A stretch of DNA of 64,000 bases from NCBI RefSeq assembly GCF_964204645.1, contig NC_134032.1, forward strand, positions 14,868,275-14,932,274, written 5' to 3'. The position numbers and the translations under genes are program-made. The notes below the pieces were generated by a model. The model did no database searches, was not told where the DNA came from, and saw nothing but the letters and a program-made list of their open reading frames with translations. Source of the stretch: Tubulanus polymorphus (taxonomy: Eukaryota > Animalia > Nemertea). Shown in pieces: positions 4,602 through 43,070 of this stretch (its first letter is position 1; each line of letters begins with the position of its first letter).

Positions 4602-5102
4602 CAGTGACCAATTGCCCAAACATTGATTAAACAACGGATTAGTGGCAATTGAAATATCATAGTTACTATGTTAATATTGTCGACCCGTTAATTCTAAAAC
4701 AATGTTTGAACAACTGGCTCCAAAACGACAAAAATATATATCGAACAAAACGACTGTTATTGTTGTATTCAAATTCTGTAGTCAAGTAAATATGATTCTT
4801 TTTCATAGTCTTTGTTTATACAATATACAAATGAATATAGAAATGTATATAGAAAATGTCAGAATTCAATCTTTACTTTCGTTTATATTAGAGTTCCTGA
4901 ATTTCATTACATTTACGAAATCTGTATTCTGTAGGTTTCCTGGCATCTACTCTACACAGCAGCCACTGCAACGTTGAGTTCCTGACCTCTACGACAAAGA
5001 AGCCATCTTCTAGAGTGTCTGATATCTGTGACAAAGTCGTCATCTTCTAGCGAGTTTCTGTGGCAATTCAGTCATCTTCTTTAGCGTTCCTGACATCTGA
5101 GT

Positions 5103-8100
5103 TCAGTCCACTGTTCCAAAATCGTCTATATCATAAAGAAAAGATAAGAAATAAATTCGAGCGTTAAGTTCATAAGGCTCAACTCCAGAACAGGTAAAAG
5201 TAGTTCTGCGGGTTGGTTCCAACATTTTCACTGAGAAAAGTATTAATACGCGCAGATCTATAGAAAGAGGCACATGAAGTAATTTTCAGAAGTCGACAAT
5301 CGGCAATCGACAATCAGAAACCTGATAGTCGACCATTTCTCGGGTCGGCAATCGGCAATCAGAAACTTGATAGTCGACCATAAGCGCATAAATCCAGGGA
5401 AAGATTGCTTTATTGCTGATAGTTTAGGCCAGGGTCCACACGAGCTGTTAAGAGTTAACTCATTGAACATGAAAAAAACGTCAACTCATGAGTTAACTAA
5501 CTATAACTCACAACTGTGGAAGTGTGCAGCATTCGCCTCACATATAAACCCAACTTAATTTTGTCCTATGATAAAATCTTTAGCAAGATCGGGTCCCACC
5601 CAGCGTAGGCATGCCAGGATATTGAAGGGATTCCCCAAAAACATTATAGGGAATCCCTATATCACTTTCTTACAACGTTTACATGTACCTCACTTTCTCT
5701 TTATGTACTACATTATTTTTGTGTCGTGCCCTACGCATCTTGAACCACTAACCTAAGTGTGGTCTTATGCCATCTGCGACAACATAGGTATCTTCTGGAG
5801 GGTTCCTGGCACCTGCGACAACGATGTAATCATCTTCTGTAGAGTTCCTGACATCTGCGACAACGTAGGTATCTTCTGGAAGGTTCGTGACATCTGGAAC
5901 AATGTAGGTATCTTCTGGAGTGTTCCTGACACCTGTGACAACGACGTAGTCATCTTCTGAAGGGTTCGTGACGTCTGGGAAAATGTAGGTATCTTCTGGA
6001 GTGTTCCTGACACCTGTGACAACGACATAGTCATCTTCTGTAGAGGTCCTAACATCTGGGACAAGGACATCTACAATATCTACATCATCGTAGATTTCGT
6101 CCTGTCTAGTGTAGATCCTATCATCAGCTAAAGTAGGTATTGGCTAAAAATAAATCCGTGAACAATTAACAAAGTATTCGCGAATACAGAATTGAAAACA
6201 ATGAGAACGTATTTATTTTTACAAACCTGAAGTGCGACAACGTAGGTATCTTCAGGAGGGCTTCGGACACCTGCGACAATGTAGGTATCTTCAGGAGGGT
6301 TCTTGATATCTGCAACAGCGACGTAGTCATCTTCTGTAGTGTTCCGGACACCTGCGACTATGTAGGTGTCTTCAGGAGGGTTCTTGATATCTGCAACAGT
6401 GACGTAGTCATCTTCTGTAGTGTTCCGGACACCTGCGACTATGTAGGTATCTTCTGGAGTGTTCCTGACACATGCAACAACGTAGGTATCTTCTGTAGGG
6501 TTCCGGACACCTGCGACAACGTAGGTATCTTCTGGAGGGCTCTGGACACCTGCGACAATGTAGGTATCTTCTGGAGGGTTCCTGATATCTGGAAAAATGT
6601 CGGTATCTTCAGGAGGGTTCTTGATATCTGCGACAACGTAGGTATCTTCTGGAGGGTTCCTGACACCTGGGACAACGACATAGTCACCTTCTGTAGAGGT
6701 CCTAACATCTGGGACAAGGACATCTACAATATCTACATCATCGTATATTTCGTCCTGTGTAGTGTAGATCCTATCATCAGCTAAAGTAGGTATTGGCTGA
6801 AAATAAATCGGTAAACAATAAACAAAATATTCGCGAATACAGAATTGAAAACAATGAGAATGTATTTATTTTTACAAACCTGAAGTGCGACAATGTAGGT
6901 ATCTTCAGGAGGGTTCTTGATATCTGCAACAGTGACGTAGTCATCTTCTGTAGTGTTCCGGACACCTGCGACTATGTAGGTATCTTCTGGAGTGTTCCTG
7001 ACACCTGCGACAACGTAGGTATCTTCTGGAGGGCTCTGGACACCTGCGACAATGTAGGTATCTTCTGGAGGGCTCCTGACACCTGCGACAACGACGTAGT
7101 CATCTTCTGTAGGGTTCAGGACACCTGCGACAACGTAGGTATCTTCTGTAGGGTTCCGGACACCTGCGACAACGTAGGTATCTTCTGGAGGGCTCTGGAC
7201 ACCTGCGACAATGTAGGTATCTTCTGGAGGGTTGCTGACATCTGGGCCAACGTAGTCATCTTCTGGAGGGTTCCGGACACCTGCGACAATGTAGGTATCT
7301 TCTGGAGGGTTCCTGACACCTGCTACAACGTAGGTATCTTCTGGAGGGTTCATGACATCTGGGCCAACGTACTCATCTTCTGGAGGGTTTCTGACATCTG
7401 CGACAAGGTTTTCATCTACGTCATCATCTGTAGAGTTCCATACATCTACGTCATCATCTGTAGAGTTCCATGCATCTACGTCATCATCTGTAGCGTTCCT
7501 TACATCAACGTCATCATCTGTAACGTTCCTGACACCTGCGACAACGACATCCACAATATCTACATCATCGTAGATTTCACCGTCATCTATGTCTTCGTAG
7601 ATACCGTCCTGTGTTGTGTAGATCCTGTCACCAACTCCAGAAGGCGGCGGCTAAAAATAAATCGGTTAAACAATTTACAAAATATTCACAAATAAGAAAA
7701 TTGAAAACAATGTATTTATATTTACAAACCTGATAGCACATTGCCCCTGGATCGGTCGTGTTGTTACCTATAAAAAATAATAGACTAGACATGAGATAAA
7801 ATATTACGTGTATTTATTCTAATTCAAAGAACTCCCTGTCTCTAAAATCAACAGTCAAAGTTTATTCTGGAGGACTCAGTTCCATTGTTATCGAATCTAA
7901 TTTGACTCAAATACCACAAACACCCCCCTTTCACTATAGCTTGTTTAAAGTAAAACAAACCAGTATTTTTGTTTCTCACGTTCCTCCGCTGTCTGCTCAA
8001 CACTGCAATGGCTATAACAGCCACTATTACTATTATCAGAAAACCGATCCCGAAAACAACTGTCAAATAACTACTTGTATCTGTATCTGTATCTGAAATA

Positions 8101-11100
8101 CAGGGTATGAAACCAATCTATATCAAACTGTTTAAAATAATAGTCTTTAGTTTATATATTTTATGTTCAACCATTTATCATTAAGCTACCTCTAACTTGT
8201 ATGACCCGCCATAGAAGTTTAAACCCAGCACCGCTTCCTGAGTTGTCTGATGTGAACTGTATTGTAATATTTCCAGCGTGGAATCCTTTACCAGGAGCAG
8301 TCGACCCGCAATACTGATAACTCCCTGATGAAGAAATAAATCTGATAAAACTTTATGAATCATAAAAATCATTCATGTTGTGAAGAGTGTTTAGATTTTT
8401 ACCGGCTCCACTCTGTATCGTCAACGCATCAGCGCAACCACCGTTACTTCTGGGTTGTATATCAAAATACGAGGAAAATGATATTTCAACAATCTGCAAA
8501 AAACATATGAATTTTAGAATTTAGTTTTAATTCAAAAAGTGAACAAACGTCTTCAGAATGCAGGGCCCGTTTATATAGATCAGATTTAACTTTAACCCGG
8601 AGTTATCAGTTTAGAACTAAACCCCAGAGCCCGGTTTCCCGAATGGGGATTTAATTTTAATTCGAATTAGGTGATAATTTGATTTAAAAATGTTTAATTC
8701 GAATTAGTTAATTGGATGATTAAATCTGTTTCACAATCGTGAATTAGCGAAAGATTAACTAACTAATTATTTCTATAACGTAGTTTCATTCATAAAATTC
8801 CTCTGTCGTTAAATAAGATGTTTTGGTTGTATGGTGAAATTGGTTTGCTCGTTTTCAGGTTAAAGTTAAAACTGAATTTAGCCCCCGCTGAGATCCTACT
8901 AGTGCAGAAAACCTGATAACATCATTTTTTCATGGACTTTATATTTACCGTGTTTTCATGAGTTTTAATCGCCCAGCTACAATTCAGTCTGCGGTAATAG
9001 TAGCTCGGATAGCGAGGACTCGTGATGAAACCTGATCTACCATTCTGTATTATAGGTGTTTTACTACATGAATCAACTACAAATAAATATTGAATTGAAT
9101 TGTTTTATATGTGATTTACTGATTCCATGATAAACTTCTCATTATGAGCTACCTTTCACAAATCGCCACAACAGTTTAAACCCTTTGTAGTTGCTATTAG
9201 AGTCGTCTGATGTAAACTCGATATGTACATCTCCGGAATAGTAACGTGTAGGTGGCGCTGTATTGCCACAATATACATTTGCTGTAAAGATAAACACACA
9301 AATCAATGATATATTTTTTAGCAGGATTTGAAAACAAAAATCTATCAGTAGCAGCCACACCGCAATATTCAAATACTCCCTGATGAAAAAGTAAATCTGA
9401 TAAAACTTTATCTATCATATAAATCATTCACGTTGTGAAGAGTGTTTAGATTTTTACCGTTACCACTTTTTATCGTCAACGCATCCCAGCAATCAACGAT
9501 ACCTTTGGATTCTATATCAAAAGACGAGTTAAATGATAATTCAACAATCTGCAAAAATATAAGAATTTAGATTATAATTTAGATTATATTTATTAATTGT
9601 AATTCAAAAAGCAAACAATCGTATTGTTTACAGAGTGTAGGACCCGTATATATATAGATCAGTTTTGTTCAAAACTAAACCCCAGATTAAAGTTAAAACG
9701 GATTTTAGTGCCCGTTGGGCTCCTGCTAGTGCAGAAACCTGATAACATCATTTTTCTCATAGACCAAATATTTACCGTGTTCTCAGGAGCTACAATCAAC
9801 CATCTACAGTCCAGATGGTCACCATAGTTGTTCGGGTAGTTAGGGCTGGCTATGACGCCTGGTCTACCATTCTGTATTATAGGTGTTTTACTACATGAAT
9901 CAACTACAAATAAATACCAGATTTATTGTTTTATATGTAATTTACTGATTCCATGATCAACTTCTCATTATGAGCTACCTTTCCAACTACGCCACAACAG
10001 TTTAAACCCTTTGTAGCCACCGCCATAGTCGTCTGATGTAAACTCGATATGTACATCTCCGGAATAGTAACGTGTAGGTGGCGCTGTATTGCCACAATAT
10101 ACATCACCATTATTTACTGTAAATATAAACACACAAATCAATGATATATTTTCTAGCAGGATTTGAAACCACAAATCTATCAGAAGCAGCCACACCGCAA
10201 TATCCAATACTCCTTGATGAAAAAATAAATCTGATAAAACTTTATCTATCATATAAATCATTCACGTTGTGAAGAGTGTTTAGATTTTTACCGTTACCAC
10301 TTTTTATCATCAACGCGTCATAGCACCGACCGCTACTACTTCTGGGTTGTATATCAAAAGACGAGTCAAATGATATTTCAACAATCTGCAAAAATATAAG
10401 AATTTCGATTATAATTTAGATTATAATTATTAATCATAATTCAAAAAGTGAACAATCGTATTGTTTACAGAGTGTAGGACCCGTTTATATAGATAAGTTT
10501 TAACTTTAACCCGGAGTTGCCAGTTCAAAAATAAACCCCAGATTAAAGTTAAAACGGATTTTAGAGCCCGTTGAGCTCCTACTAGTGCAGAAACCTGATA
10601 ACATCATTTTTCTCATAGACCAAATATTTACCGTGTTTTCATCAAGAGTTACAATCAACCAGCTACGGCACAGGGAGTTGTGATAGTTGTCCGGGTAGTT
10701 AGGACTAATTATGACGCCTGATCCCAGTAATCTATCTGTCCACCAGCAAGTCGACTCTACCAAAACTGTTCAGAAAAATACCTGTATCTATGATTTTAAT
10801 AGAGGCCGTGAATAAAGTACGTATATGCACGTAGGGGGAGGGGGTTTCAGAAATCCGTACAGGGAGGGGAGGTGTAAGCTCAAAGCGTTCATACTTCTCC
10901 AAGGGGGGGGGGGGGGTTAATGTTTATAGAACGTACTTTGTGCACGAAACACAATGTGATTTTACAAATATCCCCTTTATTTGTTGGGATTTCTTGGGAA
11001 TTCCCCATTCTCGGTCTTTCACTTCGTCAATGCGGACATTGTCATCAAAGCTCTGATGAATGCTGGTGAATTTTTCCCTCTTTAAACCATGAATCCTGAA

Positions 11101-12286
11101 AAATCCCCTTTCACATGGAGGGGGTCAATCATGAGAGTATGTACGCAAGGGGGGGGAGTTATAAACAAAAAACGTACAAAGAGCGTACATGGGCCGGGTG
11201 ATGGGGGAGGGGGTTAAAATACTGGAAGTCAAGCGCACATACTTTGTGCACGGCAGTTTTAAGACTCGTAGTATAGACCCAGTGGCTAACTCAATAGATA
11301 ATGAATTTAGTTAGCCTTCGGGTCAAGTTGATACCAGTCTATAAAAGCGGACTAGTCATCAGTCACCACACCACACTGATCACCAGGTCACCATAGCTGA
11401 CTGGTCACCAGTCATCACACCTTCACCACAGCAAAATGGTCACGACACTGACCAGACAAACTTACAAAAGCTATCAATCAGTTGTGAGTTAGAGTAAACC
11501 CTAGAGTTGAAATGAGTTCATTTTCACTGAGTTAACTCTGAGTCAAGTCTGAACTTACAACTGTGGAACTGAGTCTAGTATATTAGTAGTGGTTAGTGTG
11601 AACGACTGCCACGCGAGTTCAGTAAACTTGTCATATTTTTCAGTCATTTTCATTTCTACTATCAAATAAAAGTATAAAACCTAAATGAATACAGATTCAG
11701 ATTATATTTCTTACAATAATACTTAAGGTAGGCCTACGTAAATTATACTATTACAAACTAGATCTCTTTATAGAAATTTTCAAAAACTACGATAATATGA
11801 TATAATATATGTATGTTACTTGCTAAAAGTCACAGAATAATGTCATTTTTATGCACGCAGTTTGGACGGTAAAATTCATTGATTATCCAAGCTGAATATT
11901 TTTAAAGACACCACGGAGATTTGAAATATTTGAAAACTACTTCAGTTTTTCAACATAAGAAAATTGAAGTATTTTATCGTAAGCCCTACAATATGGACTC
12001 AAACAGGGTTTCACGACACGACAGATTTGGGGGGACTTTTGCCTAGGGGGGAGGGTTGAGCGGCCTTTTACCTGTTACCGTTCCTTCACCCCAGAGTGTT
12101 ACCGGGCTACGTAAGGCACCTGCGTCACTGATCTCAATAATTTTCCTCTCAAATTCATCTACATCAACAATCAATACAATTTAATCAGTATTAAGTGATA
12201 TTGATATTATTTATTCGCTTACCTTGAGAATTCTCGACGAATAAAATTACAGCGACCACAAACAAACTCTTCATCATCAACTCCAT
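5103..12286 (-). CDS. Type I membrane protein: signal peptide, 3 CUB domains, TM helix, ~600-aa tyrosine-repeat cytoplasmic tail
   Basis: Phase-consistent exons 12286-12223 (MELMMKSLFVVAVILFVENSQ), 10765-10632, 10385-10292, 10116-9979, 9903-9776, 9548-9458, 9281-9153, 9076-8949, 8493-8403, 8324-8190, 8092-7961 (TM VVFGIGFLIIVIVAVIAIAVL followed by SRQRR), 7767-7730, 7650-6880, 6796-6227, 6143-5753, 5125-5103 (stop). CUB hallmarks occur three times: G.I.SPNYP..Y, C.W.I, YCG, FTSD, GFKL.W. The last exon is less certain. Confidence 0.85.
5753..7650 (-). repeat. Coding 39/42-bp tandem repeat (VAGVRNPPEDTY) inside a triplicated exon+intron cassette
   Basis: Repeat units are directly visible; introns 7729-7651, 6879-6797 and 6226-6144 are homologous to each other. 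Confidence 0.9.
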
Positions 12287-21409: not shown

Positions 21410-21830
21410 TGTCAGTATTTGACACCAACTTTGGATAGAATTTTACCAGTCTCAACTTTAAGAGACAGAGTTAACTGTATTTCACAAACTCTTACTCAGT
21501 ATTTAACACCAACTCGGGGTAGAATTTCACCAGTCTCAACTTTACCGCAGTAAGAGACAGAGTCTACTGTATATCACAAACTCTTACTCAGTATCTGACA
21601 CCAACTCGGTGTAGAATTTTACCGGTCTCAACTTTACCGCAGTAAGAGACAGAGTCTACTGTATTTCACAAACTCATACTCAGTATTTGACACCAAATCG
21701 GGGTAGAATTTTACCAGTCTCAACTTTACCGCAGTAAGAGACAGAGTCTACTGTATTTCACAAACTCTTCCTCAGTATTTAACACCAACTCGGGGTAGAA
21801 TTTTACCAACTTTACCGCAGTAGGAGACTG
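21410..21830. repeat. 92-bp tandem repeat (same family as 42540-43070)
   Basis: CAGTATTT recurs at 92-bp spacing. Confidence 0.9.
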
Positions 21831-28600: not shown

Positions 28601-31600
28601 AAAATACAGACTTTTCCTTTTTTAGATTCGGCCTTCTTCGTTTCCTCCTTTCTATTCAAAGCAGACGCAGCGAACATGTCCTCCTCATCGTCATCAAGGA
28701 AACTTCCACTAGAGGGCGCTGGTTTACCTAAGATGACATTCCGTTACTTCATATGCATAATTCATCAAAAACCTCGAATTCAAATTTTCTCTCACTTACC
28801 GCTAGTTTTATTCGGTTTTGCTGTTGCCATGGCAGCGAACAGACCGTTGTCATCTTCATCATCGTCGTCGAACAACCCGCCACCGCGAGAGGGCGCCACC
28901 GGTTTCTTTGTCGTCTGCTGCTGTGGTTTATCATCTGGAGGTGAGTTTTTAAATAGTTCACTATCGCCCCCTATAAAACATTGAAAAAGGAATTCTAGGT
29001 CATGGATTTATCTTTCTCTTCTCAGGGTGGCCGAGGAGGGGGTATTTATTTTCGGGGGGTTTAATGCTAAGCGGAGGATGTTCTAGAAGAGAGTGTTATC
29101 TATTTATTTTACCTGCGAAGATTGACACGCCACCTGTTGGCACTTTTTTCCCGCTGTACGTTCGGTCTCTGTTGGTCTCTGTAATACGGAGCAACGATTG
29201 CACTTTTTACGACGAAGAAACTTCGACACAAATTACGATTTCATGATTTCCGAATCGAGATTTTCTCGTTACCTTTTTCGCCATGATTTTCATCTTCGGA
29301 TGAATTGTGATCGTCGTTATCGGCGACGGACGTCGTCATCGGTTTTTTAGATTTAATCGCCGCGGATTCATCATCATCGTAGACATCATCGAACAGACCT
29401 CCCTAAAAACAAAACACGTACATTATGAATCGTATTTGCCCTCACTGTAACACTGTCGGCGACGAATCCCATTTTCTTTTTTATTGTAAACTGCAGGATA
29501 ACTTAAGAACTAAATATGATATTGTAAATCTAAACCTAGACACTTTTACTTTTCTTTCGGCCTTTACTAATCCCAATAAACCAATCTTCTTAAATATCGC
29601 GAAATCTATATGTTAGACATTGTATTACTTCTCTCTCTCCTTTTATTATTTTTCTTTTAGTGCACATGTTTTTTTTGTTTTTTTGTCTGTTTGTTGTTGT
29701 TATTGTTGTTTTTCTTCATTTACAATCTTATACTTTGGATTTATGATGAATAAATTAAAATTGAAATTGAATTATGATTGTCGGAGAATGTGAAACGCAG
29801 CAGACGCTCTCCAGGGGGAGACACTACCTTAGGGTCGTCGAAGAGACCACCGCCTCCCGAAAACAATCCCATCTGATCTTCAGGTTCCTCGGCCGGCGCT
29901 CCAAATAAATCTGTCATAAACAAATCAATATTGATTATAGAAATGACCACTAGGTGTCACTGAAGCGACCACTAGGTGTCACTGTCATACCTTCGTCTTC
30001 CTGCTGCTGTTGTTTCTGCTGTTTCTTGCTGCCTTTGTTACCATGGTGATGATGATGATGGTGTCGATGTTTTTTACTGCCGTGACTCGTTCCCGATTCG
30101 GTACGTTTACGCGGTGGCGCCCTCTTTTGTTCGGTTCCTTCATCGTCTGCTTCCTCTTCCTCTTCTTCGTCATTCGCTGCTGCTGATGGTGGCGCCACCG
30201 CGGCTCCGAGTCTTCTTGCTAATTCGTCCTGGAAGCCGCCCGTAGGTGGCACTTTCTGCAAGAAGTGGATTCGAGGCGAAATTATAAAAACGTTTTGGTA
30301 GAATTTCTTAATTTTTCGAGACGATTTTTTGAAAATTTACTTTTTTCTCCTCATTTTCGATGAATAATTCAGATTCTGATTCTTCTTCATTCGATTCTTT
30401 GCCGAACAAATCTTCTTTATCGCTCTATAGAATAACAAGCGCCATCTATTGAGCACTGTATTCAACGGATGAATTTCTCTCGTATGGAAGTTTTTTTTTT
30501 TTAAACGTTACCTGATTATTATCGTCGCTGCCAGATTTTGCGTCACTCGATGAACTCGAATACGACTGCAACAAAAATTTTTATCAGAATTTTTTCAGGA
30601 ATTTCTGTATTCGTTTAGATTTAGGTTTGGTATAGATCAGGGACCTTTCACCAAGAATATCCTGATTAAATCATCACCAGCAAGAACAACGAGACATCAA
30701 AAATTCAAATTCCCTGATTAAATGATAAGATATCCTCAGTGAGGGCTGTTTCTTATCAAGAGGTTCCTTGTGACACTCGTCACCAGCAAGAACAACGAGA
30801 CACCAAAAATTCAAATTCCCTGATTGATTATAAGATATTCTCAGTGAGGGCTGTTTCTTATCAAGTGGTTCTTTGTGCCACTGGTCACCAGCAAGAATTC
30901 AAATTCCCTGATAAAGTTACGAGATATCCTCAGTGAGGGACGTTTCTTATCAAGAGGTTCCTTGTGACACTCATCACCAACAAGAACAACTAGACACCAA
31001 AAATCCAAATTCCCTTATTTTCTCTGGATTAACCTGATCAGCATGAACCCTGCTTTCCACAGCTCAGTCGGAGCCTTTAATTTTAAAGTCTAAGATCATT
31101 TCTTATTGTTCCCTCGCTCAACCAGGTAGTCGTCGTACAGATTGTTCTCGGTTTACCTCAGTTTCTGATCCCGATTCAGATCCCGATTCATCGCTGAATT
31201 TTACTTCATCTTCGGATTCGACGCTTCCAGCTTCTGATTCAGTTTCTTCTTCATCTTCTGATAATGGAAAATCAGATATAATTGAAATATCGATCGAGTT
31301 TCCAGGAGAAACTTGTGAAATATATATTCTTACCGGAATACTCCTTAAGTCCGACCGTGTCGTCCTGGTGAAAAGCTGGGGTTCCTATTATATGCGGCAG
31401 AGCTCTGCTTGAATACGGGTCCTAAAAATAACCCCCCCAAAAAAATTTACTTTCATAAAAATCTTTTTTTCAAACATTCAATTTCGAAAATATGTTTCGA
31501 TCTAAAAATTGGGGAAAACATTTTTCGGAAATGAAAAGAAAAATTATTTCGACGAAAAATTAGCTGACCTTGACTCTCATAATCGGCTCGACTCGTTCCC

Positions 31601-37912: not shown

Positions 37913-40900
37913 ATGGCATCCACCGATGAATTAGCCTGCACCTATAGTGCGCTGATCCTCGCAGACGATGACGTGGCAATCACCGTAAGTCTCATCGCAT
38001 TTTTTTCCGACCGACGACACGTTTTCTGATAAATTTCTCGCATCTCGAGTGATTTGATTCGCGATCTATTTTCGATTTGTTCCAGGCTGACAAATTGGCG
38101 ACGATCCTGAAAGCTGCCAACGTGAAAACCGAGCCGTACTGGCCAGGTAAGAATATAAACGTTAATTTTGAGAATTAATTTGTGGATTGTTGAGCATTGA
38201 TTGATGAGGAGAAATTGAATATTTATGTGAAATGTATAATGATGACACTCTTTCGGGTCTGAATCATCTGTAGACAAAACTGCCAACGTGTACTGAATAC
38301 ATTTCATTTCTTCAAAAACATCCTTGATGCCCTTATGGGTCCTCCTTATAAAGCCTACCGAGATCAACCGAGATGACATATAACATGTTTATTTATTCCT
38401 TCATCTCGGTAAATTATGTCATAAGGAGGACTGGCGCGTATGGCTGAATAGTAATATGTTGCGAGATTGGTGTAGCAAATTTGTCCGGGCCAACCGGCCG
38501 CTCCACCCACCTGCCAATTTCTGCAAAGCCTTATTTTCGAAGAAATTGGCAAATCTACTAATGTCTATTTCAACCTGACTTGAGAGCATTCCGGGTGGCC
38601 TAGCTCGCTAATTTTTGGTAGTACATACCTGATAAAGGTCTTAATAAGGGCCAGAAAGGAAGGGCAGTCGACCTAAATCATGATTAATCCATTTGAAATT
38701 GTATCCAAAAAATCTTCACTGAAAGGGGTTAATTGAAGAGAAGTGACTCCATGATTTGAATGTTTGACAATATGTTTCCATGCCTACGTACCAAACTTCA
38801 GTTGGTAGGCATGGAGACATATTGTTAAACTTTCAAATCATGTAGTCTCTTTTCTCTAATGAACCCCTCTCAATGCAGACTTTTTGGATATCCTTCAATA
38901 CAGTCTAAAGTGGATTAAAAAACAATATTTTAGGTCAGCTGCCAGTCCTTTCTGGTCCTAATAAGACTTCTATCAGGTATGTACTACCAAAAATGAGCGA
39001 GCTAGGCCACCAGGAATGCCCTCAAGTCAGGTTGAAATAGACATTAAGGAGTGCTTCGATCAGTAGAAAATCCTCTGACCTAATAGTTCCTGAATTTGAT
39101 GTCTTTATTTCTTAGTTAATGAGATCATTCAACTTGAAAGCACGTTCTCCGCTGCGTGTTTTACTGTAATAAATGATGACACACTTTCGGGTCTGAACTA
39201 CGTTCAAAATACGAGGAATGTAGACAAACTTATCCCAACGTGTTCTGATAATACCGTTCATTATGTACCTCGGAAACTGGACCCAGTTCCTATAGATGTG
39301 AGAATGAGTCATGAGTTAAAATCTGATGGGTCAATTTGTGTATGAGTTAAAGCAAGAGTCAAATCTCAATCTGGATTCCACTCAAGTCCACGGTTCCACT
39401 CTTGACTTAGAATCGGGCCATTGAGACAAATCAGATTCAACTCTAGATTCAAATCTTAACCAAGAACTCTCTTATTGTTTAATTAATTAGTTGCATGGTC
39501 GCAAAAAAAGTCATCTTCTATATTGATGAAAAAATGTTTTTATTTTCAGGTCTTTTCGCTAAGGCTCTTTCCGGAATCGATATCAAGAGTTTAGTATCGA
39601 ACATCGGAACCGCAGCGCCGTCTGCTGGAGGAGCTGCCCCGGCTGCCGCAGCTGGTGGCGCCGCCCCGGCTGCTGAGGAGAAGAAGGAAGAAAAGAAGGA
39701 GGAGTCTGAGGAAGAATCTGATGATGATATGGGATTCGGTAAGTCTCGAGGATATAAATGTGGCCGCGCCCTATAACACCCCAGCCCTCACAGACTGACA
39801 CTGAGTTATTGAGCCTTGTGGCCTCTAAACTTTTGGTTTATTAAAACCCTGTGAGAAATCAAATAAAACCATTGCTAGCTATACTAACAGTTCATACATA
39901 TACTGGCTGCTGGTACGTCGCGTTGGTACATATCGATTCTTAATGCATTATTAGTGTAGGATTAAGTGGGCTCCTAGATTCCTTATTCCTTGATTGACAC
40001 TAGTACTTTTCTAATGTTAAGAAAAGTACTAGTTAGTGTCACTACCACTTTCAATTAACCTTGAATTTTGATATCGTCATGAAACTGCCCCCTGTCTGTC
40101 TGTCATGGAACTATGTACAGAGATCAGGATTTTCGGGGGGGTCACTATTTTGTACTGTTAAAATTTGTTCGCATATGAAAGTGATACCTTATGGGAGGAA
40201 AGGAGTTCATGAACGTCAACTGTCTCCTCTCCCATCTCCCCTTCCTCTCTCTGTCTCCTCTCCCGTCTCCCCTTCCTCTCTCTGTCTACTCTCTCCTCCC
40301 ATCTCCCCTTCCTCTCTCTGTCTCCTCTCCCATCTCCCCTTCCTCTCTGTCTACTCTCTCCTCCCATCTCCCCTTCCTCTCTCTGTCTCCTCTCCCGTCT
40401 CCCCTTCCTCTCTCTGTCTACTCTCTCCTGCCATCTCCCCTTCCTCTCTCTCCTTCCATCTCCTCACAGTCACTCTGCTTGTTAAATCCTATGGTATTTT
40501 CCAAGCTTTTTAAATCTGTGATAGATCAATGTTTCTATACTTGCTATGCCGTAACGTTAAACTTATGGTACGTTGTATAGGTACAAATCAGTCCGAACGA
40601 TCCCTTTGGGTTAACTATTATTTGCAGGACACCAAACTGAGTCGTTATGATTGGACCTGAGGAGAGAATCCCACAATGATAATAAAAAGTCCGAAAATGA
40701 AACTTCGAGATAGTAGTTTATTTCAACGTTTCGACTTTATCCTAATAGTCATCTTCAGGAATACTGTATTCCTTGAGCTAGTGTAGTTTATTCAACGTTT
40801 CGACTATATCCTAATAGTCATCTTCAGGAATACTGTATTCCTTGAGCTAGTGTAGTTTATTCAACGTTTCGACTATATCCTAATAATCATCTTCAGGAAT

Positions 40901-41154
40901 AATGAAGATGACTTATTCCTGATGAATTATTCCTGAAGATGACTATTAGGATATAGTCGAAACGTTGAAATAAACTACTATCTCGAAGTTTCATTTTCGG
41001 ACTTTTTATTATCATTGTGGGATTCTCTCCTCATCGCGTCAACACGGATATAGTGTTCTACCAATCGTGATGATTGGACAATCTTTTAAAGAAACTAAGA
41101 AATATTGAGTTAATGGTTGTTTTTGTTTTTCTAATTTCAGGTCTCTTTGATTAA
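37913..41154 (+). CDS. RPLP1: 60S acidic ribosomal protein P1
   Basis: Exons 37913-37984, 38086-38146, 39550-39738, 41141-41154: [51 protein letters not shown]...[13 protein letters not shown]. Confidence 0.98.
38228..38306 (+). ncRNA. Intronic box C/D snoRNA, SNORD2/snR39B-like (copy 1)
   Basis: Perfect 10-bp terminal stem TGAAATGTAT/ATACATTTCA; box C ATGATGA 38239; D' CTGA 38259 preceded by TCTTTCGGGT (complement of 28S ACCCGAAAGA); box D CTGA 38293. Confidence 0.9.
38559..39046. mobile_element. Foldback MITE (one-ended copy at ~34582-34735)
   Basis: Long inverted arms TAATGTCTATTTCAACCTGACTTGAG / CTCAAGTCAGGTTGAAATAGACATTA. Confidence 0.85.
39165..39255 (+). ncRNA. Intronic box C/D snoRNA, SNORD2/snR39B-like (copy 2)
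   Basis: Box C ATGATGA 39173; CTTTCGGGT-CTGA (D' 39193); shared TGTAGA; TCCCAACGTGTT-CTGA (D 39245); weaker terminal stem. Confidence 0.82.
39787..39933 (+). ncRNA. Candidate box H/ACA snoRNA in RPLP1 intron 3
   Basis: Hairpin closed by CTCACAG/CTGTGAG, H box AAATCA (39856), second hairpin ACCATTGC/GCGTTGGT with an internal loop, then ACA + 3 nt; about 147 nt. Confidence 0.55.
40661..41075. mobile_element. Palindromic putative Penelope-like remnant with 4 hammerhead motifs (3 on -, 1 on +)
   Basis: About 100-bp inverted arms; CAACGTTTCGAC at 40724, 40793, 40862 (69-bp period); plus-strand copy at 40928-40972. Confidence 0.75.
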
Positions 41155-42539
41155 AGAACTCATTGTTTGACTCTTTTCTACTGTCATTTGGTTTGTGAAA
41201 CTGCAGGGGAAAATGATTGAATAATAAAAAAAAAAACATCGTAAAATCTACATGAAAATGTTGTTGTCTTTTGAAATTGTTTTCTTATTCGATGGATTCA
41301 TTGTATTTCAACAGAGGATAGTTAATCCCCCTTCCCCTGCAACAGCCTTGTTGGTCATTTCAGAGGACTTCCACTGCTCTTCCCAATTGTGTTTATATCT
41401 GGTATGAAATTGCAGGATTCCAACACAGCCGCCTTGATAGTGATCAATAGGGATCATTCATTTATTACATGCGCACAAAATTTGAATTTTTCAATCCCCC
41501 TCTGTACGCAAAATCAGCAGTTTTCTCATATACATTAAGTATTACAGTACTCAATTGCACTGATGGCTCCCCTAATGCGGACGTCACAAATGAATGACCC
41601 CCATACTAAAATTGCAGGATTCAATCACAGCCTCTATGAAAGTTATAAAATGGTAATGATTCAATTCGAGGCTTTGAGTATCATCAAAAATACAATTTTA
41701 GTATTATGGAATGGGCTTATTGCATCACCATGTCTCATATTTATTCATTAACGAATTCAATTAAATTGGTAACTAATTACATGTAGAACAAAATCCTTCT
41801 TGTGCTTTGCTAACTTCTAATCGCACAAACATACACGATCGCCATCTATTAGAATTCCCCGGAACTAACTATTTTAATGACACATTTGCCCGCGAATTCG
41901 TGTGTCGTGGTGTGCACACGTGCGCCATCTACCAGGTAACAGAAATATCGCGTAATTAATAAGAACGCAAAAATTAGACTGGTTACCGGTCTCTATCTTC
42001 AATTGGATATTGAATGGGACAGGCAACCAGTCTATACAAGAACGTAATAATTAAGAATTTCAAGATCTTATCCACATCTTTCCTAAAATCCTCGTTTTGC
42101 CTCGAAGCTACCATTTTCTGCGGAGATCAGACGATCACAAAACTACTCTTAAAATCGCTTGCATTTTCGATCAGTGTAAATATCATATCTTTATTTCAAT
42201 TAAATATACGGTGACCATTTATATCTCATTGTATTATTATATCACAGATAAAAACCGAAGAATAAAAATAGTATTTTTAAAAATAGTTATAATTAATTGC
42301 GTTATCTGGAAAATCAATTCGAGTAGATGGATAAAATCCATGTGCGGTCAGAATTAGTACTACATGTATAAAGTTTCTTTTTAGGTTCATAAGTAAAAAC
42401 AATCTTAATGAAATTAAGTAATATAGAATTAGAAAATGACGGATTCCACTACAACATCATCATACATTTATCATAAATTTTACTGTTTACCCATCCCAAA
42501 CTGTTAGGACAGACTTGTAAAGTTCCCTGCTGAAGTAAG

Positions 42540-43070
42540 AGTCAGTATCTACTGTATTTCACTAACTCTTACTCAGTATTTAACACCAACTCGGGGTAGA
42601 ATTTTACCGGTCTCAACTTTATCGCAGTAAGAGACAGAGTCTACTGTATTTCACAAACTCTTACTCAGTATTTAACACCGACTCGGGGTAGAATTTTACC
42701 GGTCTCAACTTTACCGCAGTAAGAGACAGATTCTACTGTATTTCACAAACTCTTACTCAGTATTTGACACCAACTCGGGGTAGAATTTTACCAGTCTCAA
42801 CTTTACCGCAGTAAGAGACACAGTCTACTGTATTTCACAAACTCTTACTCAGTATTTGACACCAACTCGGGGTAGAATTTTACCGGTCTCAACTTTACCG
42901 CAGTAAGAGACAGAGTCTACGGTATTTCACAAACTCTTACTCAGTATTTGACACCAACTCGGGGTAGAATTTTACCGGTCTCAACTTTACCGCAGTAAGA
43001 GACAGAGTTTACTGTATTTCACAAACACTTCAGTATTAAACACCAACTCGGTGTAGAATTTTACCAGTCT
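42540..43070. repeat. 92-bp tandem repeat, about 5.7 copies
   Basis: Same unit as 21410-21830. Confidence 0.9.

What the first reader, a model, noticed from the sequence alone, without database searches (positions are those of the whole stretch)
5103..8092. CUB receptor with about 38 tandem acidic tyrosine motifs in its cytoplasmic tail
Seen: after 3 CUB domains and one TM helix, ~600 aa of low-complexity tail carry ~31 (P/T)E-D-(T/D/E)-Y-(V/I) repeats plus IYEDI, three IYDDV and three IYT motifs, with no catalytic domain. Established: acidic-preceded Tyr suits Src-family kinases, pY-D-D-V fits the Nck SH2 preference, and multivalent pTyr tails (nephrin, LAT, p130Cas) drive clustered signalling, typically with far fewer sites. 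Inference: an undescribed high-valency signalling or immune-recognition receptor. Exons 7650-6880 and 6796-6227 are phase 0-0, so skipping them could tune valency.
Basis: partly seen in the sequence, partly recalled or inferred. Interest (0 to 1): 0.8.

Follow-up and report, generated by a model that had tools for sequence, protein, structure and literature searches.

The report
Ribbon-worm CUB receptor, 39-tyrosine tail
This is an intact ribbon-worm (Tubulanus polymorphus) gene for a membrane receptor with three CUB domains outside the cell and a 609-residue acidic tail carrying 39 tyrosines in near-identical repeats; it is the longest-tailed member found of a family seen so far only in this species, and it probably works as a many-site phosphotyrosine docking platform, which nobody has tested.

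Summary
On the minus strand, 16 GT-AG exons (window 12286-5103) encode a signal peptide, three CUB domains, one transmembrane helix and a 609-aa tail. The tail has 39 Tyr: 31 E-[D/G]-x-Y-[V/I] repeats, 1 IYEDI, 3 IYDDV, 3 RIYT and 1 CYQ.

The tail was built by tandem triplication of an intron-plus-exon unit. No Pfam domain matches it, and AlphaFold2 gives low confidence.

An exhaustive search of 1.84 billion representative proteins found real relatives of the tail only in T. polymorphus:
- five other CUB receptors on the same chromosome;
- three FN3-type receptors on another chromosome;
- two more loci that carry only the juxtamembrane and head part.

The cytoplasmic cassette is conserved (omega 0.19-0.29), while the CUB ectodomains evolve fast (omega 0.5-1.0).

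A multivalent phosphotyrosine scaffold is the best reading, but it is inferred. No annotated isoform skips a tail exon. The motifs are not ITAM, ITIM, ITSM or NPxY.

This scan had already reported two paralogues on other DNA (s1-510426, s1-510405). This gene has the highest valency of the family members found.

The parts
12224..12286 (-). Exon 1: start codon and signal peptide (MELMMKSLFVVAVILFVENSQ)
   Evidence: Exact mapping of RefSeq protein P0046 residues 1-21, with a GT donor.
9980..10766 (-). CUB domain 1, in three exons (10766-10632, 10385-10293, 10117-9980)
   Evidence: Pfam CUB hits on the exon pieces and on the whole protein; exon map.
9154..9904 (-). CUB domain 2, in three exons (9904-9776, 9548-9459, 9282-9154)
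   Evidence: Pfam CUB: the exon a piece scores 28.4 bits, above the 21.4-bit cut-off; whole-protein hit; exon map.
8191..9077 (-). CUB domain 3, in three exons (9077-8949, 8493-8401, 8322-8191)
   Evidence: Pfam CUB: exon a piece 25.2 bits; whole-protein hit; exon map. The nearest solved ectodomain is cubilin CUB5-8, 3kq4.
7959..8093 (-). Transmembrane exon: the helix VVFGIGFLIIVIVAVIAIAVL, followed by the basic stop-transfer stretch SRQRRNVRNKNT
   Evidence: Mean Kyte-Doolittle hydropathy 3.33 over 21 residues. AF2 models a helix at alignment residues 2-35 with pLDDT 67-77. The basic residues follow the helix, so the tail lies in the cytoplasm.
7730..7767 (-). 38-nt mini exon (G)NNTTDPGAMCYQ. 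It converts phase 1 to phase 0. It is conserved in all CUB-type paralogues and recognisable in the FN3-type ones (PGEIYLQ).
   Evidence: DNA reading, exon map and family alignment A1.
6880..7650 (-). Tail exon A (257 codons, phase 0-0). It holds the head (GDRIYTTQDGIYEDIDDGEIYDDVDIVDV), four tyrosine-free DDDVD-x-(R/W)N-x-T 10-aa units, and 13 PEDxY[V/I] units.
   Evidence: TRF periods of 30 and 39 nt.
6227..6796 (-). Tail exon B (190 codons, phase 0-0). It holds a shortened head (DDRIYTTQDEIYDDVDIVDV), 11 tyrosine units and one unit with Tyr changed to Asp.
   Evidence: The intron in front of it is 92% identical to the intron before exon A.
5754..6143 (-). Tail exon C (130 codons). It holds a shortened head and 7 tyrosine units, and ends at the donor AG|GTTAGT.
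   Evidence: Its head is 97% identical in DNA to the head of exon B.
5103..5126 (-). Last coding exon, DDFGTVD plus the stop codon TGA. Paralogues keep the same C-terminus (DDNGTMD).
4930..5102 (-). Decayed, frame-shifted copies of the 13-aa repeat just after the stop codon (DVRNAKEDD*, EDDDFVTDIRHS, EDGFFVVEVRNS). They look like relics of a longer array and now lie after the stop codon.
   Evidence: Three-frame translation and the DNA itself.

Best explanation
The gene is an intact T. polymorphus gene, RefSeq LOC141910083. It encodes a type I, non-catalytic receptor. Three fast-evolving CUB domains face outward and bind an unknown ligand. One helix crosses the membrane. A 609-aa, probably disordered tail with net charge about -100 faces the cytoplasm.

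The tail has three blocks, made by tandem duplication of an intron-plus-exon unit. Each block starts with a 'head' of I-Y motifs: RIYTxQ (a YxxQ motif), IYEDI (in block A only, close to the Src-SH2 ligand pYEEI) and IYDDV (a YDxV motif, Nck-type). After the head come 7-13 copies of a 13/14-aa unit whose conserved core is [P/T]-E-D-x-Y-[V/I].

Proposed mechanism (inferred, not shown). Ligand-driven clustering lets a cytoplasmic tyrosine kinase phosphorylate the head motifs. The kinase or adaptors then dock there through their SH2 domains. The repeat tyrosines are phosphorylated processively, as in the p130Cas substrate domain. The result would be up to about 38 docking sites that recruit SH2 proteins multivalently, possibly with a sharp, condensate-like threshold as shown for nephrin-Nck.

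The same cytoplasmic cassette is attached to other ectodomains in this genome: CUB arrays of 2-8 domains, F5/8C+FN3 receptors, and two unclassified receptors. It therefore behaves as a shared, lineage-specific signalling module whose valency (14 to 39 Tyr) is set by repeat and exon copy number.
For: Shown:
- Gene structure: 16 exons with GT-AG introns and consistent phases, reproducing RefSeq XP_074656898.1 residue for residue.
- Domains and topology: three CUB domains, a strong TM helix followed by basic residues, and no domain in the tail. AF2 pLDDT in the tail is 22-50.
- Conservation of the core: E(-3), D(-2), Y(0) and V/I(+1) are constant or nearly so across the repeats of all eight family proteins, while positions +2 to +6 differ between genes.
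- Selection against the paralogue at 15.10 Mb: omega is 0.19 for the head and 0.29 for TM plus juxtamembrane, against 0.53-0.98 for the CUB domains.
- Selection against the paralogue at 11.92 Mb: in the head pS is 0.61 and pN is 0.195, and all three Tyr are kept.
- The cassette is reused on FN3-type receptors on another chromosome and at two further loci.
- The genome encodes at least 36 SH2-domain hits.

From the literature:
- YDxV motifs bind the Nck SH2 domain, and pTyr valency sets the clustering threshold (PMC4238058; PMC3507883).
- DCBLD1/2 are CUB-containing scaffold receptors with 7-8 YxxP motifs phosphorylated by Fyn and Abl (PMC6029619).
- p130Cas has 15 YxxP motifs that Src phosphorylates processively (PMC12071665).
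- pYEEI is the v-Src SH2 ligand.
Against: - There is no evidence of phosphorylation, kinase specificity or SH2 binding.
- No read-level RNA evidence was obtained. Expression rests on the RefSeq model and on selection signatures.
- Repeat units are almost identical at DNA level (GAA 32/32, TAC 28/32). Tyr conservation within the gene therefore reflects recent amplification, not selection.
- The conserved positions (-3, -2, +1) point more to a kinase determinant than to an SH2 determinant. The +3 residue is Ala, Thr or Pro, which matches no well-known SH2 class.
- From memory, T or D at -1 is not the Src-family optimum.
- The tail has no ITAM, ITIM, ITSM, NPxY, YxN or YxxM.
- Lower dS in the tail (0.14 against 0.31-0.37 in the CUB domains), and 100% identical head DNA in four paralogues, show gene conversion or recent exchange. 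That inflates the apparent conservation.
Confidence: 0.55

Rival explanations
1. Endocytic or scavenger receptor. The CUB ectodomain, which is most like cubilin's ligand-binding CUB5-8, captures cargo. The head motifs YEDI and YDDV act as unphosphorylated YxxPhi and acidic-cluster sorting signals (AP-2) or as LIR-like motifs. The repeat array would be an acidic spacer and not a docking array.
For: - The nearest solved ectodomain is cubilin CUB5-8 (3kq4, E 8.8e-38).
- YEDI and YDDV fit YxxPhi; 12 YxxPhi matches were found.
- The head is the most conserved part of the tail and occurs at two loci with almost no repeats after it.
Against: - The commonest repeat form, Y[V/I]VA (19 units), has Ala at +3 and does not fit YxxPhi. 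Yet its E-D-x-Y-[V/I] core is kept in every paralogue.
- One or two sorting signals suffice for endocytosis, so this reading gives no reason for 31 conserved Tyr units.
- It is not exclusive with pTyr signalling.
Confidence: 0.15
2. Runaway repeat expansion. Only the head cassette is functional. The 13-aa array and the exon triplication are recent, nearly neutral products of slippage and unequal crossing-over in a tolerant disordered tail, so the extreme valency has no adaptive meaning.
For: - Units are near-identical in DNA.
- Introns between the blocks are 91-93% identical.
- Decayed repeat relics lie after the stop codon.
- Repeat number varies widely among paralogues, from 9 to 31.
- Two loci have the head with only 0-2 repeats.
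Against: - Only 1 of 32 units in this gene has lost its Tyr, and 1 of 19 is Y-to-F in a paralogue.
- The E-D-x-Y-[V/I] core is kept in arrays that have diverged at +2 to +6 in genes on different chromosomes.
- No frameshift or stop interrupts 578 repeat-exon codons, while the copies just outside the CDS have decayed.
Confidence: 0.15
3. The tail is not a linear-motif array but a structured or polyanionic element. It could be a beta-rich repeat fold with one Y-V-V-A-G-V strand per unit, or a cation-binding or electrostatic domain (net charge about -100).
For: AF2 draws one short strand per repeat. The composition is 17% Val and 16% Asp with a strict 13-aa period.
Against: - pLDDT is at most 50 over the whole tail and pTM is 0.29.
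- There are 10% prolines and a Pro-Pro pair in most units.
- No Pfam hit and no structural relative was found.
Confidence: 0.05
4. The locus is not expressed as modelled: a pseudogene, or an ab initio annotation artefact produced by open repeat frames.
For: - No read-level RNA evidence was obtainable here.
- Other frames and the opposite strand of the repeat also give long ORFs, for example 300 aa on the plus strand. ORF length alone is therefore weak evidence.
Against: - All 16 exons have canonical splice sites and compatible phases.
- The frame is the one conserved in all paralogues, with pN well below pS.
- RefSeq lists two isoforms.
- Earlier follow-ups of two paralogues reported expression (s1-510426, s1-510405; not re-tested here).
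Confidence: 0.05

Closest known systems
T. polymorphus paralogues: 'cubilin-like' XP_074656264-8 (P0002, P0048), P0074, P0075 and P0076; 'neuropilin-1-like' P0051; and the FN3-type proteins labelled 'LAR/RPTP-delta-like' (P0004, P0005, P0052, P0053)
   Same: - They share the TM-proximal basic stretch, the mini exon, the RIY-YEDI-YDDV head, the DDDVD units and the PEDxY[V/I] repeats; the CUB-type ones also share the DD(F/N)GT(V/M)D C-terminus.
- The CUB-type genes lie on the same chromosome (C8, 11.9-16.3 Mb).
   Different: - This gene has only 3 CUB domains but the longest tail: 609 aa and 39 Tyr, against 204-422 aa and 14-26 Tyr.
- It is the only one in which the later tail exons keep a complete head with two extra Tyr each. 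In the paralogues the second tail exon starts with a truncated head, ADDRISPEDDY.
- Its ectodomain is only 58-74% identical to theirs.
CDCP1 (Trask), a human CUB-domain type I receptor and Src substrate
   Same: - It has CUB domains outside, one TM helix and a non-catalytic tail.
[quoted passage not shown]
   Different: - From memory, the CDCP1 tail is about 150 aa with 5 Tyr and no tandem repeats.
- There is no tail homology: phmmer found no CDCP1.
- The CDCP1-specific CUB models do not hit this protein at E <= 0.001.
DCBLD1 and DCBLD2 (ESDN), scaffolding receptors
   Same: - They are CUB-containing type I receptors with no enzyme domain.
- Their intracellular region carries a repeated Tyr motif (7-8 YxxP) that Fyn and Abl phosphorylate to recruit CRK/CRKL SH2 domains. 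Signalling by ligand-induced clustering has been proposed for them (PMC6029619).
   Different: - This protein has no LCCL or discoidin domain.
- Its motif is E-D-x-Y-[V/I], not YxxP; only 5 incidental YxxP occur.
- It has about 4-5 times more sites, generated by tandem DNA repeats.
- There is no sequence homology in the tail.
Nephrin cytoplasmic tail (the Nck/N-WASP system)
   Same: It has YDxV motifs (three, as in this tail) that bind the Nck SH2 domain. The number of pTyr sites sets the threshold for membrane clustering and phase separation (PMC4238058).
   Different: - Nephrin has an Ig/FN3 ectodomain and three Nck-binding YDxV sites.
- Here YDDV makes up only 3 of 38 motifs.
- Binding to nemertean Nck is untested.
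p130Cas (BCAR1) substrate domain
   Same: It is a disordered region with many repeats of one Tyr motif (15 YxxP). A docked Src kinase phosphorylates it processively (PMC12071665; PMC3983058 abstract). It is the best analogue for the proposed 'head docks the kinase, repeats are the substrate' mechanism.
   Different: - p130Cas is a cytosolic adaptor, not a receptor.
- Its motif differs and it is not a recent tandem DNA repeat.
- It has 15 sites, against 31 repeat units plus 7 head motifs here.
Cubilin (the label RefSeq gives the paralogues)
   Same: It is the closest solved structure by sequence for the CUB array: 3kq4, CUB5-8, E 8.8e-38.
   Different: - From memory, cubilin has 8 EGF and 27 CUB domains, no TM segment and no cytoplasmic tail.
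- Identity to database proteins named cubilin is at most 33%.
- The 'cubilin-like' name reflects domain-level similarity only.

Membership tests
CUB domain proteins (Pfam PF00431) | At least one CUB domain scoring above the Pfam gathering threshold | tested here: met
   Three stretches, E 4.2e-44, 149.8 bits against a 21.4-bit cut-off. The exon pieces also hit.
T. polymorphus tyrosine-repeat tail family (defined here and by earlier scan notes) | A TM helix followed by a basic stretch, the mini exon (..PG..Y.Q), the head RIY[TS]TQ..[IV]YEDI..DDVDIVDV and tandem [P/T]EDxY[V/I] units | tested here: met
   Alignment A1 has invariant R59 I60 T63 Q64 Y68 E69 D70 I71 and the repeat E/D/Y columns. phmmer gives E 1e-250 to 5e-33 to the family proteins only.
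Cubilin | An N-terminal EGF array plus 27 CUB domains, no transmembrane segment, membrane attachment through amnionless (architecture from memory) | tested here: not met
   There are no EGF hits, only three CUB domains, and a TM helix is present. Identity to proteins named cubilin is at most 33%.
CDCP1 | CDCP1-type CUB domains (PF23665, PF23668) and a homologous tail with the Src-binding tyrosines | tested here: not met
   These Pfam models are not among the hits of P0046 at E <= 0.001. The tail search recovered no CDCP1.
DCBLD1/2 | A CUB + LCCL + discoidin ectodomain and a tail with 7-8 conserved YxxP motifs | tested here: not met
   No LCCL or F5/8C hit. Only 5 incidental YxxP occur. Feature list taken from PMC6029619.
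Neuropilin | Two CUB + two F5/8C + MAM domains and a short tail | tested here: not met
   Only CUB hits. The neuropilin-2 CUB domains align at E 1e-20 as a domain-level similarity.
Immunoreceptor tails (ITAM, ITIM, ITSM, hemITAM) | Y..[LI]x6-12Y..[LI]; [SIVL].Y..[IVL]; T.Y..[VI]; an acidic triad plus Y..L | tested here: not met
   A regular-expression scan of the 609-aa tail found 0 matches for each motif. The only near match is YEDIDDGEIYDDV, with a 5-residue spacer and V at the second +3.
Nck-type YDxV docking sites | A Y-D-x-V motif in a cytoplasmic disordered region | tested here: met
   Three YDDV motifs, one in each head, at P0046 residues 461, 709 and 899.
Nck-type YDxV docking sites | Phosphorylation-dependent binding of the Nck SH2 domain | not testable with these tools
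   This needs a biochemical assay.
Non-catalytic tyrosine-phosphorylated receptors or scaffolds (functional class) | The tail tyrosines are phosphorylated in vivo and recruit SH2 or PTB proteins | not testable with these tools
   Only plausibility is shown: the topology, acidic Tyr motifs, purifying selection, and SH2 genes in the genome.
Expressed protein-coding gene | Transcripts spanning the modelled junctions | tested here: inconclusive
   A RefSeq model with two isoforms exists.

The most novel reading that the evidence does not exclude
The cytoplasmic cassette (basic stretch, mini exon, I-Y head, E-D-x-Y-[V/I] array) is a lineage-specific, modular phosphotyrosine signalling platform. Palaeonemerteans would have attached it by exon shuffling to at least three classes of fast-diversifying ectodomain, forming a previously unknown non-self or environment recognition system. 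Its output threshold would be tuned genetically by repeat and exon copy number (14 to 39 tyrosines), possibly through condensate formation. This gene would be the highest-valency receptor tail I know of.
Probability: 0.3. Interest if true: 0.8.

Novelty: new variant of a known kind. Interest (0 to 1): 0.55.

Why it matters
Multivalent phosphotyrosine tails such as those of nephrin, LAT, p130Cas and DCBLD are the standard examples of signalling by clustering and phase separation. They carry 3-15 sites that were fixed long ago.

This family is a natural series. One conserved motif is present in 9 to 31 tandem copies (14 to 39 tyrosines in all), on receptors whose outer domains evolve quickly, and the copy number is generated by visible recent exon and repeat duplication. 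If the tyrosines are phosphorylated, the family gives a ready-made valency ladder for testing how the number of sites sets signalling thresholds. It could also reveal a recognition-receptor system in a phylum whose cell-surface signalling has, to my knowledge, been little studied.

The work also corrects misleading automatic names in this family ('cubilin-like', 'neuropilin-1-like', 'LAR-like').

Tried and rejected
2. The search for homologous proteins with exon A (length window 141-450 aa) found nothing at E <= 1e-5. The junction-spanning piece P0046:340-500 also found nothing. No transcript-derived fragments turned up; this is uninformative for repeats.
3. The look-up of encoding contigs with P0046 gave no record. 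The protein-atlas search on the tail gave no usable hit.
4. Non-Tubulanus hits of the exhaustive phmmer search (P0006-P0045: lungfish, locust, stick insect, metagenomic proteins) were inspected. They are unrelated repeat proteins that share only composition or short words such as NPPEDTYLF, so I rejected them as relatives.
5. My guess that the ectodomain exons at loci L021 and L022 are PLAT/LH2-like was not supported; Pfam gave no hits.
6. ITAM, ITIM, ITSM, hemITAM, NPxY, YxN, YxxM, PxxP and dileucine motifs are all absent from the tail.
7. Tyrosine sulfation (acidic-flanked Tyr) was rejected on topology. The repeats follow the TM helix and a positive-inside stretch, so they are cytoplasmic.
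8. An assembly artefact or collapsed haplotig was rejected as the origin of the three blocks. The blocks differ by 7-17%, and each has its own intact splice sites.
9. The AF2 model of the tail is too low in confidence (mean pLDDT 36) to justify a fold search, so none was run.
Exons were searched by reference. The full-length sequence used afterwards is database protein P0046, which maps back exactly onto the window.
Full report
**1. What is in the sequence**

The feature lies on the minus strand. Three-frame translation of 5000-8200 and the DNA itself show three consecutive exon-like blocks. Each opens with PIPTLADDRIYTxQDEIYDDVDIVDV; the first opens with PPPSGVGDRIYTTQDGIYEDIDDGEIYDDVDIVDV. 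Each block then runs through 13/14-residue units of the type NPPEDTYVVAGVR.

- Tandem Repeats Finder reports periods of 39 nt (30 copies, 6233-7406) and 30 nt (7413-7529).
- A regular-expression scan of all six frames of the 64-kb window finds E-D-x-Y-[V/I] only here: 13 + 10 + 7 = 30 hits. It also finds IYEDI once and IYDDV three times.
- Counting by exon gives 16, 13 and 9 tyrosines in exons A, B and C and one in the mini exon, 39 in all. Of these, 31 sit in [P/T/S]-E-[D/G]-x-Y-[V/I].

**2. Gene model**

I read the splice sites from the DNA.

- The TM exon ends at 7961, in phase 1.
- A 38-nt mini exon (7767-7730) restores phase 0.
- Exon A (7650-6880) is 771 nt and exon B (6796-6227) is 570 nt.
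- Exon C starts at 6143 and ends at the donor AG|GTTAGT (5754/5753).
- A short last exon (5126-5103) supplies DDFGTVD and the stop codon.

Upstream, each of the three CUB domains is split into three exons.

I searched my own model exon by exon, by reference, and did not join exons myself. The exhaustive protein search then returned the RefSeq proteins of this very locus. These are XP_074656898.1 (isoform X1, 1018 aa, P0046) and XP_074656900.1 (X2, 927 aa, alternative start inside CUB1), both named 'uncharacterized protein LOC141910083 [Tubulanus polymorphus]'. P0046 maps back onto the window without a single mismatch, in 16 blocks that all have GT..AG flanks.

- Pfam finds three CUB domains in P0046 (E 4.2e-44) and nothing else.
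- The 634 C-terminal residues give only sub-threshold noise.
- The TM segment VVFGIGFLIIVIVAVIAIAVL has mean hydropathy 3.33 and is followed by SRQRRNVRNK. The tail is therefore cytoplasmic.
- This topology rules out tyrosine sulfation as the meaning of the acidic Tyr motifs.

**3. How the tail was built**

- The introns in front of exons A, B and C (79, 83 and 83 nt) are 91-93% identical to each other.
- The heads of B and C are 97% identical, and exon bodies are 83-89% identical.

The unit of duplication is therefore intron plus exon. The copies have diverged enough to exclude an assembly artefact.

Within the array the units are nearly identical in DNA (GAA 32/32, GAT 30/32, TAC 28/32). Conservation of Tyr inside this one gene is thus a consequence of recent amplification and says nothing about selection.

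Directly after the stop codon (5102-4930) lie frame-shifted, decayed repeat copies. Copies outside the coding sequence decay, whereas 578 repeat-exon codons inside it remain open.

**4. Relatives**

phmmer of exon A against 1.84 billion representative proteins gave 45 hits. The five strong ones (E 1e-250 to 5e-33) are all T. polymorphus RefSeq proteins. I inspected the weaker hits, which come from lungfish, locust, stick insect and metagenomes. They are unrelated repeat proteins.

A six-frame search of the worm's own genome finds the tail at these places:

| Location | Loci |
|---|---|
| Contig C8 | 11.92, 14.87 (this gene), 15.10, 15.565, 15.87 and 16.28 Mb |
| Contig C2 | 4.37, 4.38 and 4.39 Mb |
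| Contig C8, head cassette only | 3.117 and 4.142 Mb |

- The C8 genes are CUB receptors with 2 to 8 CUB domains. RefSeq labels them 'cubilin-like' or 'neuropilin-1-like'.
- The C2 genes have an F5/8C-like domain and FN3 repeats but no phosphatase domain, despite the labels 'LAR-like' and 'RPTP-delta-like'.
- The two extra C8 loci carry the TM exon, the mini exon and the head, with only 0-2 repeats. Their ectodomain exons match no Pfam family.

The ectodomain of this gene is 63-66% identical to the CUB paralogues, and at most 33% identical to anything outside the species, where the matches are generic cubilin, neuropilin or tolloid CUB arrays. The nearest solved structure is cubilin CUB5-8 (3kq4), followed by neuropilin-2 and MASP.

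No nemertean other than T. polymorphus appeared in any hit list. 'Species-restricted' therefore means 'not found in the collections searched'; sampling of related worms looks thin.

**5. Position of this gene in the family**

| Gene type | Tail length | Tyr | E-D-x-Y units |
|---|---|---|---|
| This gene | 609 aa | 39 | 31 |
| Four large CUB paralogues | 392-422 aa | 24-26 | 18-21 |
| 2-CUB gene | 219 aa | 15 | 10-11 |
| FN3-type genes | 204 aa | 14-15 | 9 |

This gene is also the only one whose later tail exons keep a complete head (RIYTxQDEIYDDVDIVDV). In the paralogues the second tail exon begins with a truncated ADDRISPEDDY. It therefore has the fewest CUB domains among the large C8 genes and the highest valency.

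My counts for P0002 (25 Tyr, 19 repeats) and P0076 (20 units by the count, 19 by the stricter pattern) agree with the earlier scan notes s1-510405 and s1-510426. By their coordinates, those notes are the paralogues at 15.87 and 15.565 Mb.

**6. Evidence that the tail matters**

- Across the eight family proteins, the repeat positions E(-3), D(-2), Y(0) and V/I(+1) are constant or nearly so. Positions +2 to +6 differ between genes: VAGVR, FADAR, NTNIR.
- Against the 11.92-Mb paralogue the 40-codon head has pS 0.61 but pN 0.195, and all three tyrosines are retained.
- Against the 15.10-Mb paralogue (P0074, whose CDS I mapped on fetched DNA), Nei-Gojobori estimates are:

| Region | omega | dS |
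|---|---|---|
| CUB1 | 0.98 | 0.31 |
| CUB2 | 0.60 | 0.34 |
| CUB3 | 0.53 | 0.37 |
| TM + juxtamembrane | 0.29 | 0.17 |
| Head + DDDVD units | 0.19 | 0.14 |

The inside is conserved and the outside diverges. That is the pattern expected of a recognition receptor family with a shared signalling module.

There is a caveat. The lower dS of the tail, and the 100% identical head DNA in four paralogues, show that gene conversion or recent exchange also homogenises the tails. Part of the conservation is therefore not selection.

One observation remains unexplained. The core codons GAA-GAT-...-TAC are almost invariant even at synonymous sites in the distant 11.92-Mb and C2 arrays. The cause could be common descent of the amplified unit, a purine-rich splicing-enhancer constraint, or codon bias. 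I could not separate these.

**7. Structure**

AlphaFold2 was run on the TM segment plus the first 336 tail residues, with the eight family tails as the alignment.

- It gives a TM helix at pLDDT 67-77 and a tail at 22-50. Mean pLDDT is 36 and pTM is 0.29.
- It draws one short strand per repeat, but at a confidence that carries no weight.

The composition is 17% V, 16% D, 10% P, 10% T and 6.6% Y, and the net charge is about -100. The best description is an intrinsically disordered acidic tail with beta-prone Y-V-V-A-G-V hexapeptides.

**8. Mechanism**

The tail contains no ITAM, ITIM, ITSM, hemITAM, NPxY, YxN, YxxM, PxxP or dileucine motif. It contains the following:

| Motif | Count | Comment |
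|---|---|---|
| YxxQ (RIYTTQ, RIYTRQ) | 3 | From memory, the STAT3-type docking consensus |
| YEDI | 1 | One residue from pYEEI, the v-Src SH2 ligand (PMC3507883) |
| YDDV | 3 | YDxV, the Nck SH2 motif of nephrin and Tir (PMC4238058, PMC3507883) |
| Y[V/I]VA | 19 | Main repeat form |
| Other Y[V/I]xx | 12 | Variant repeat forms |

The head tyrosines have Ile at -1. From memory (Songyang et al. 1995), that is the preference of cytoplasmic kinases such as Src and Abl. The repeat tyrosines have acidic residues at -3 and -2 (T or D at -1) and an aliphatic residue at +1. Also from memory, that is closer to the receptor-kinase or Syk type of substrate.

I therefore propose the following sequence of events. 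This is inference only.

1. Clustering of the receptor leads to phosphorylation of the head motifs.
2. A kinase or adaptor docks on the phosphorylated head through its SH2 domain.
3. The adjacent repeat array is then phosphorylated processively, as Src does with the 15 YxxP motifs of p130Cas (PMC12071665).
4. The phosphorylated array binds SH2 proteins multivalently.

[quoted passage not shown] A tail with around 38 sites would push such a threshold very low. The worm genome has at least 36 SH2-domain hits, so readers of such sites exist.

DCBLD1/2 are the nearest precedent for a CUB-containing, non-catalytic scaffold receptor with a repeated Tyr motif (7-8 YxxP, Fyn/Abl, CRKL; PMC6029619). 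CDCP1 is the nearest in domain plan. Neither is homologous in the tail.

**9. The exon-skipping idea**

The phases allow it. However, both RefSeq isoforms of this gene contain A, B and C. Every isoform difference I could find in the family lies in the signal peptide or the ectodomain; one example is a 14-aa GKNLNTLHNVNDFY insertion in one CUB domain of the 15.87-Mb gene. None touches the tail. The idea is possible but unsupported.

**10. Limits**

There is no read-level evidence for transcription, splicing or repeat-number polymorphism.
- Searches for transcript-derived protein fragments were blank. So were the exact-product look-up and the ESM Atlas search.
- Expression therefore rests on three things: the RefSeq model with two isoforms, the coherent splice phases, and the selection signatures. 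Earlier follow-ups reported that two paralogues are expressed, which I did not re-test.

**11. Verdict**

The gene is real-looking and intact, and no published description of it turned up. It encodes a non-catalytic CUB receptor with an extraordinary number of conserved acidic tyrosine motifs.
- It is one member, the most extreme found, of a T. polymorphus family defined by a shared cytoplasmic cassette. This scan has met that family twice before.
- Phosphotyrosine scaffolding is the most likely function (about 0.55).
- The rivals are an endocytic role for the head motifs and a largely neutral repeat expansion.
- An immune role and valency tuning by splicing remain speculation.

Noticed in passing
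G000:C8:~3.117 Mb (L021:3960-4630, +) and G000:C8:~4.142 Mb (L022, - strand): Two further loci carry the TM exon, the mini exon (GNNTTDPDPGDIYLQ) and the head (PIYQTQDDVYEDIENDDDDVYDDVDI). Only 0-2 PEDTY-type units follow the head. The upstream ectodomain exons match no Pfam family. These may show the ancestral short-tail state of the cassette.
   Followed up: partly
G000:C2:4.37-4.39 Mb (L011-L013; proteins P0004, P0005, P0052, P0053): Three tandem genes are named 'LAR-like' or 'RPTP-delta-like' by RefSeq. They have an F5/8C-like domain and FN3 repeats but no phosphatase domain. They end in the same tyrosine-repeat tail as the CUB receptors, with a 26-aa double unit (NPTEDDYVNTNIRKATEDTYVVADVM). 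The cassette has therefore moved between ectodomain classes and chromosomes.
   Followed up: partly
window 5754-7389 and paralogue loci L002-L013, L023: The repeat core is conserved at synonymous sites across all family genes, including distant ones (Glu GAA in 149 of 150 units, Asp GAT in 146 of 150, Tyr TAC in 138 of the 148 units that keep Tyr). Head synonymous divergence to the 11.92-Mb gene is nevertheless about 0.6. The cause is unresolved: descent from one amplified unit, a GAAGAT-type splicing-enhancer constraint, or codon bias.
   Followed up: partly
G000:C8 15.10, 15.565, 15.87 and 16.28 Mb (L002, L003, L005, L007): Four CUB paralogues have 100% identical DNA over the 120-nt head, while their membrane-proximal CUB regions are only 70-86% identical in protein. 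This indicates gene conversion or recent exchange of the tail exons.
   Followed up: partly
window 10292-10245, 9458-9411, 8400-8356 (minus strand): The first ~45 nt of the intron after the middle exon of each CUB domain are nearly identical. They stay in frame (GKNLNTLHN[V/M]ND[L/F]YD[R/S], then a stop). The homologous 14 codons are annotated as coding in isoforms X1 and X2 of the 15.87-Mb paralogue (P0048 residues 345-358). This may be an alternative 5' splice site that inserts a loop into a CUB domain.
   Followed up: partly
window 4930-5102 (minus strand): Frame-shifted, decayed copies of the 13-aa repeat lie immediately after the stop codon. They look like relics of a once longer array.
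   Followed up: yes
window 40713-40901 and 49500-49950; 21459-21808 and 42534-43070; 30674-30986 and 61083-61601: There are three pairs of satellite-like arrays that share a unit. The 69-nt unit occurs in opposite orientation at its two sites; its 49.5-kb array was noted by another reader as a hammerhead-ribozyme candidate. The 92-nt unit has the same orientation at both sites. The ~105-nt unit is in opposite orientation.
   Followed up: no
window 6793-7695 (+ strand) and the other minus-strand frames of 5765-7554: The repeat keeps long ORFs open in non-coding frames and on the opposite strand: 300 aa on the plus strand, and 94-101 aa SGTLQKIPTLSQV-type ORFs. These are by-products of the repeat, not genes, and they show why ORF length is weak evidence here.
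   Followed up: yes
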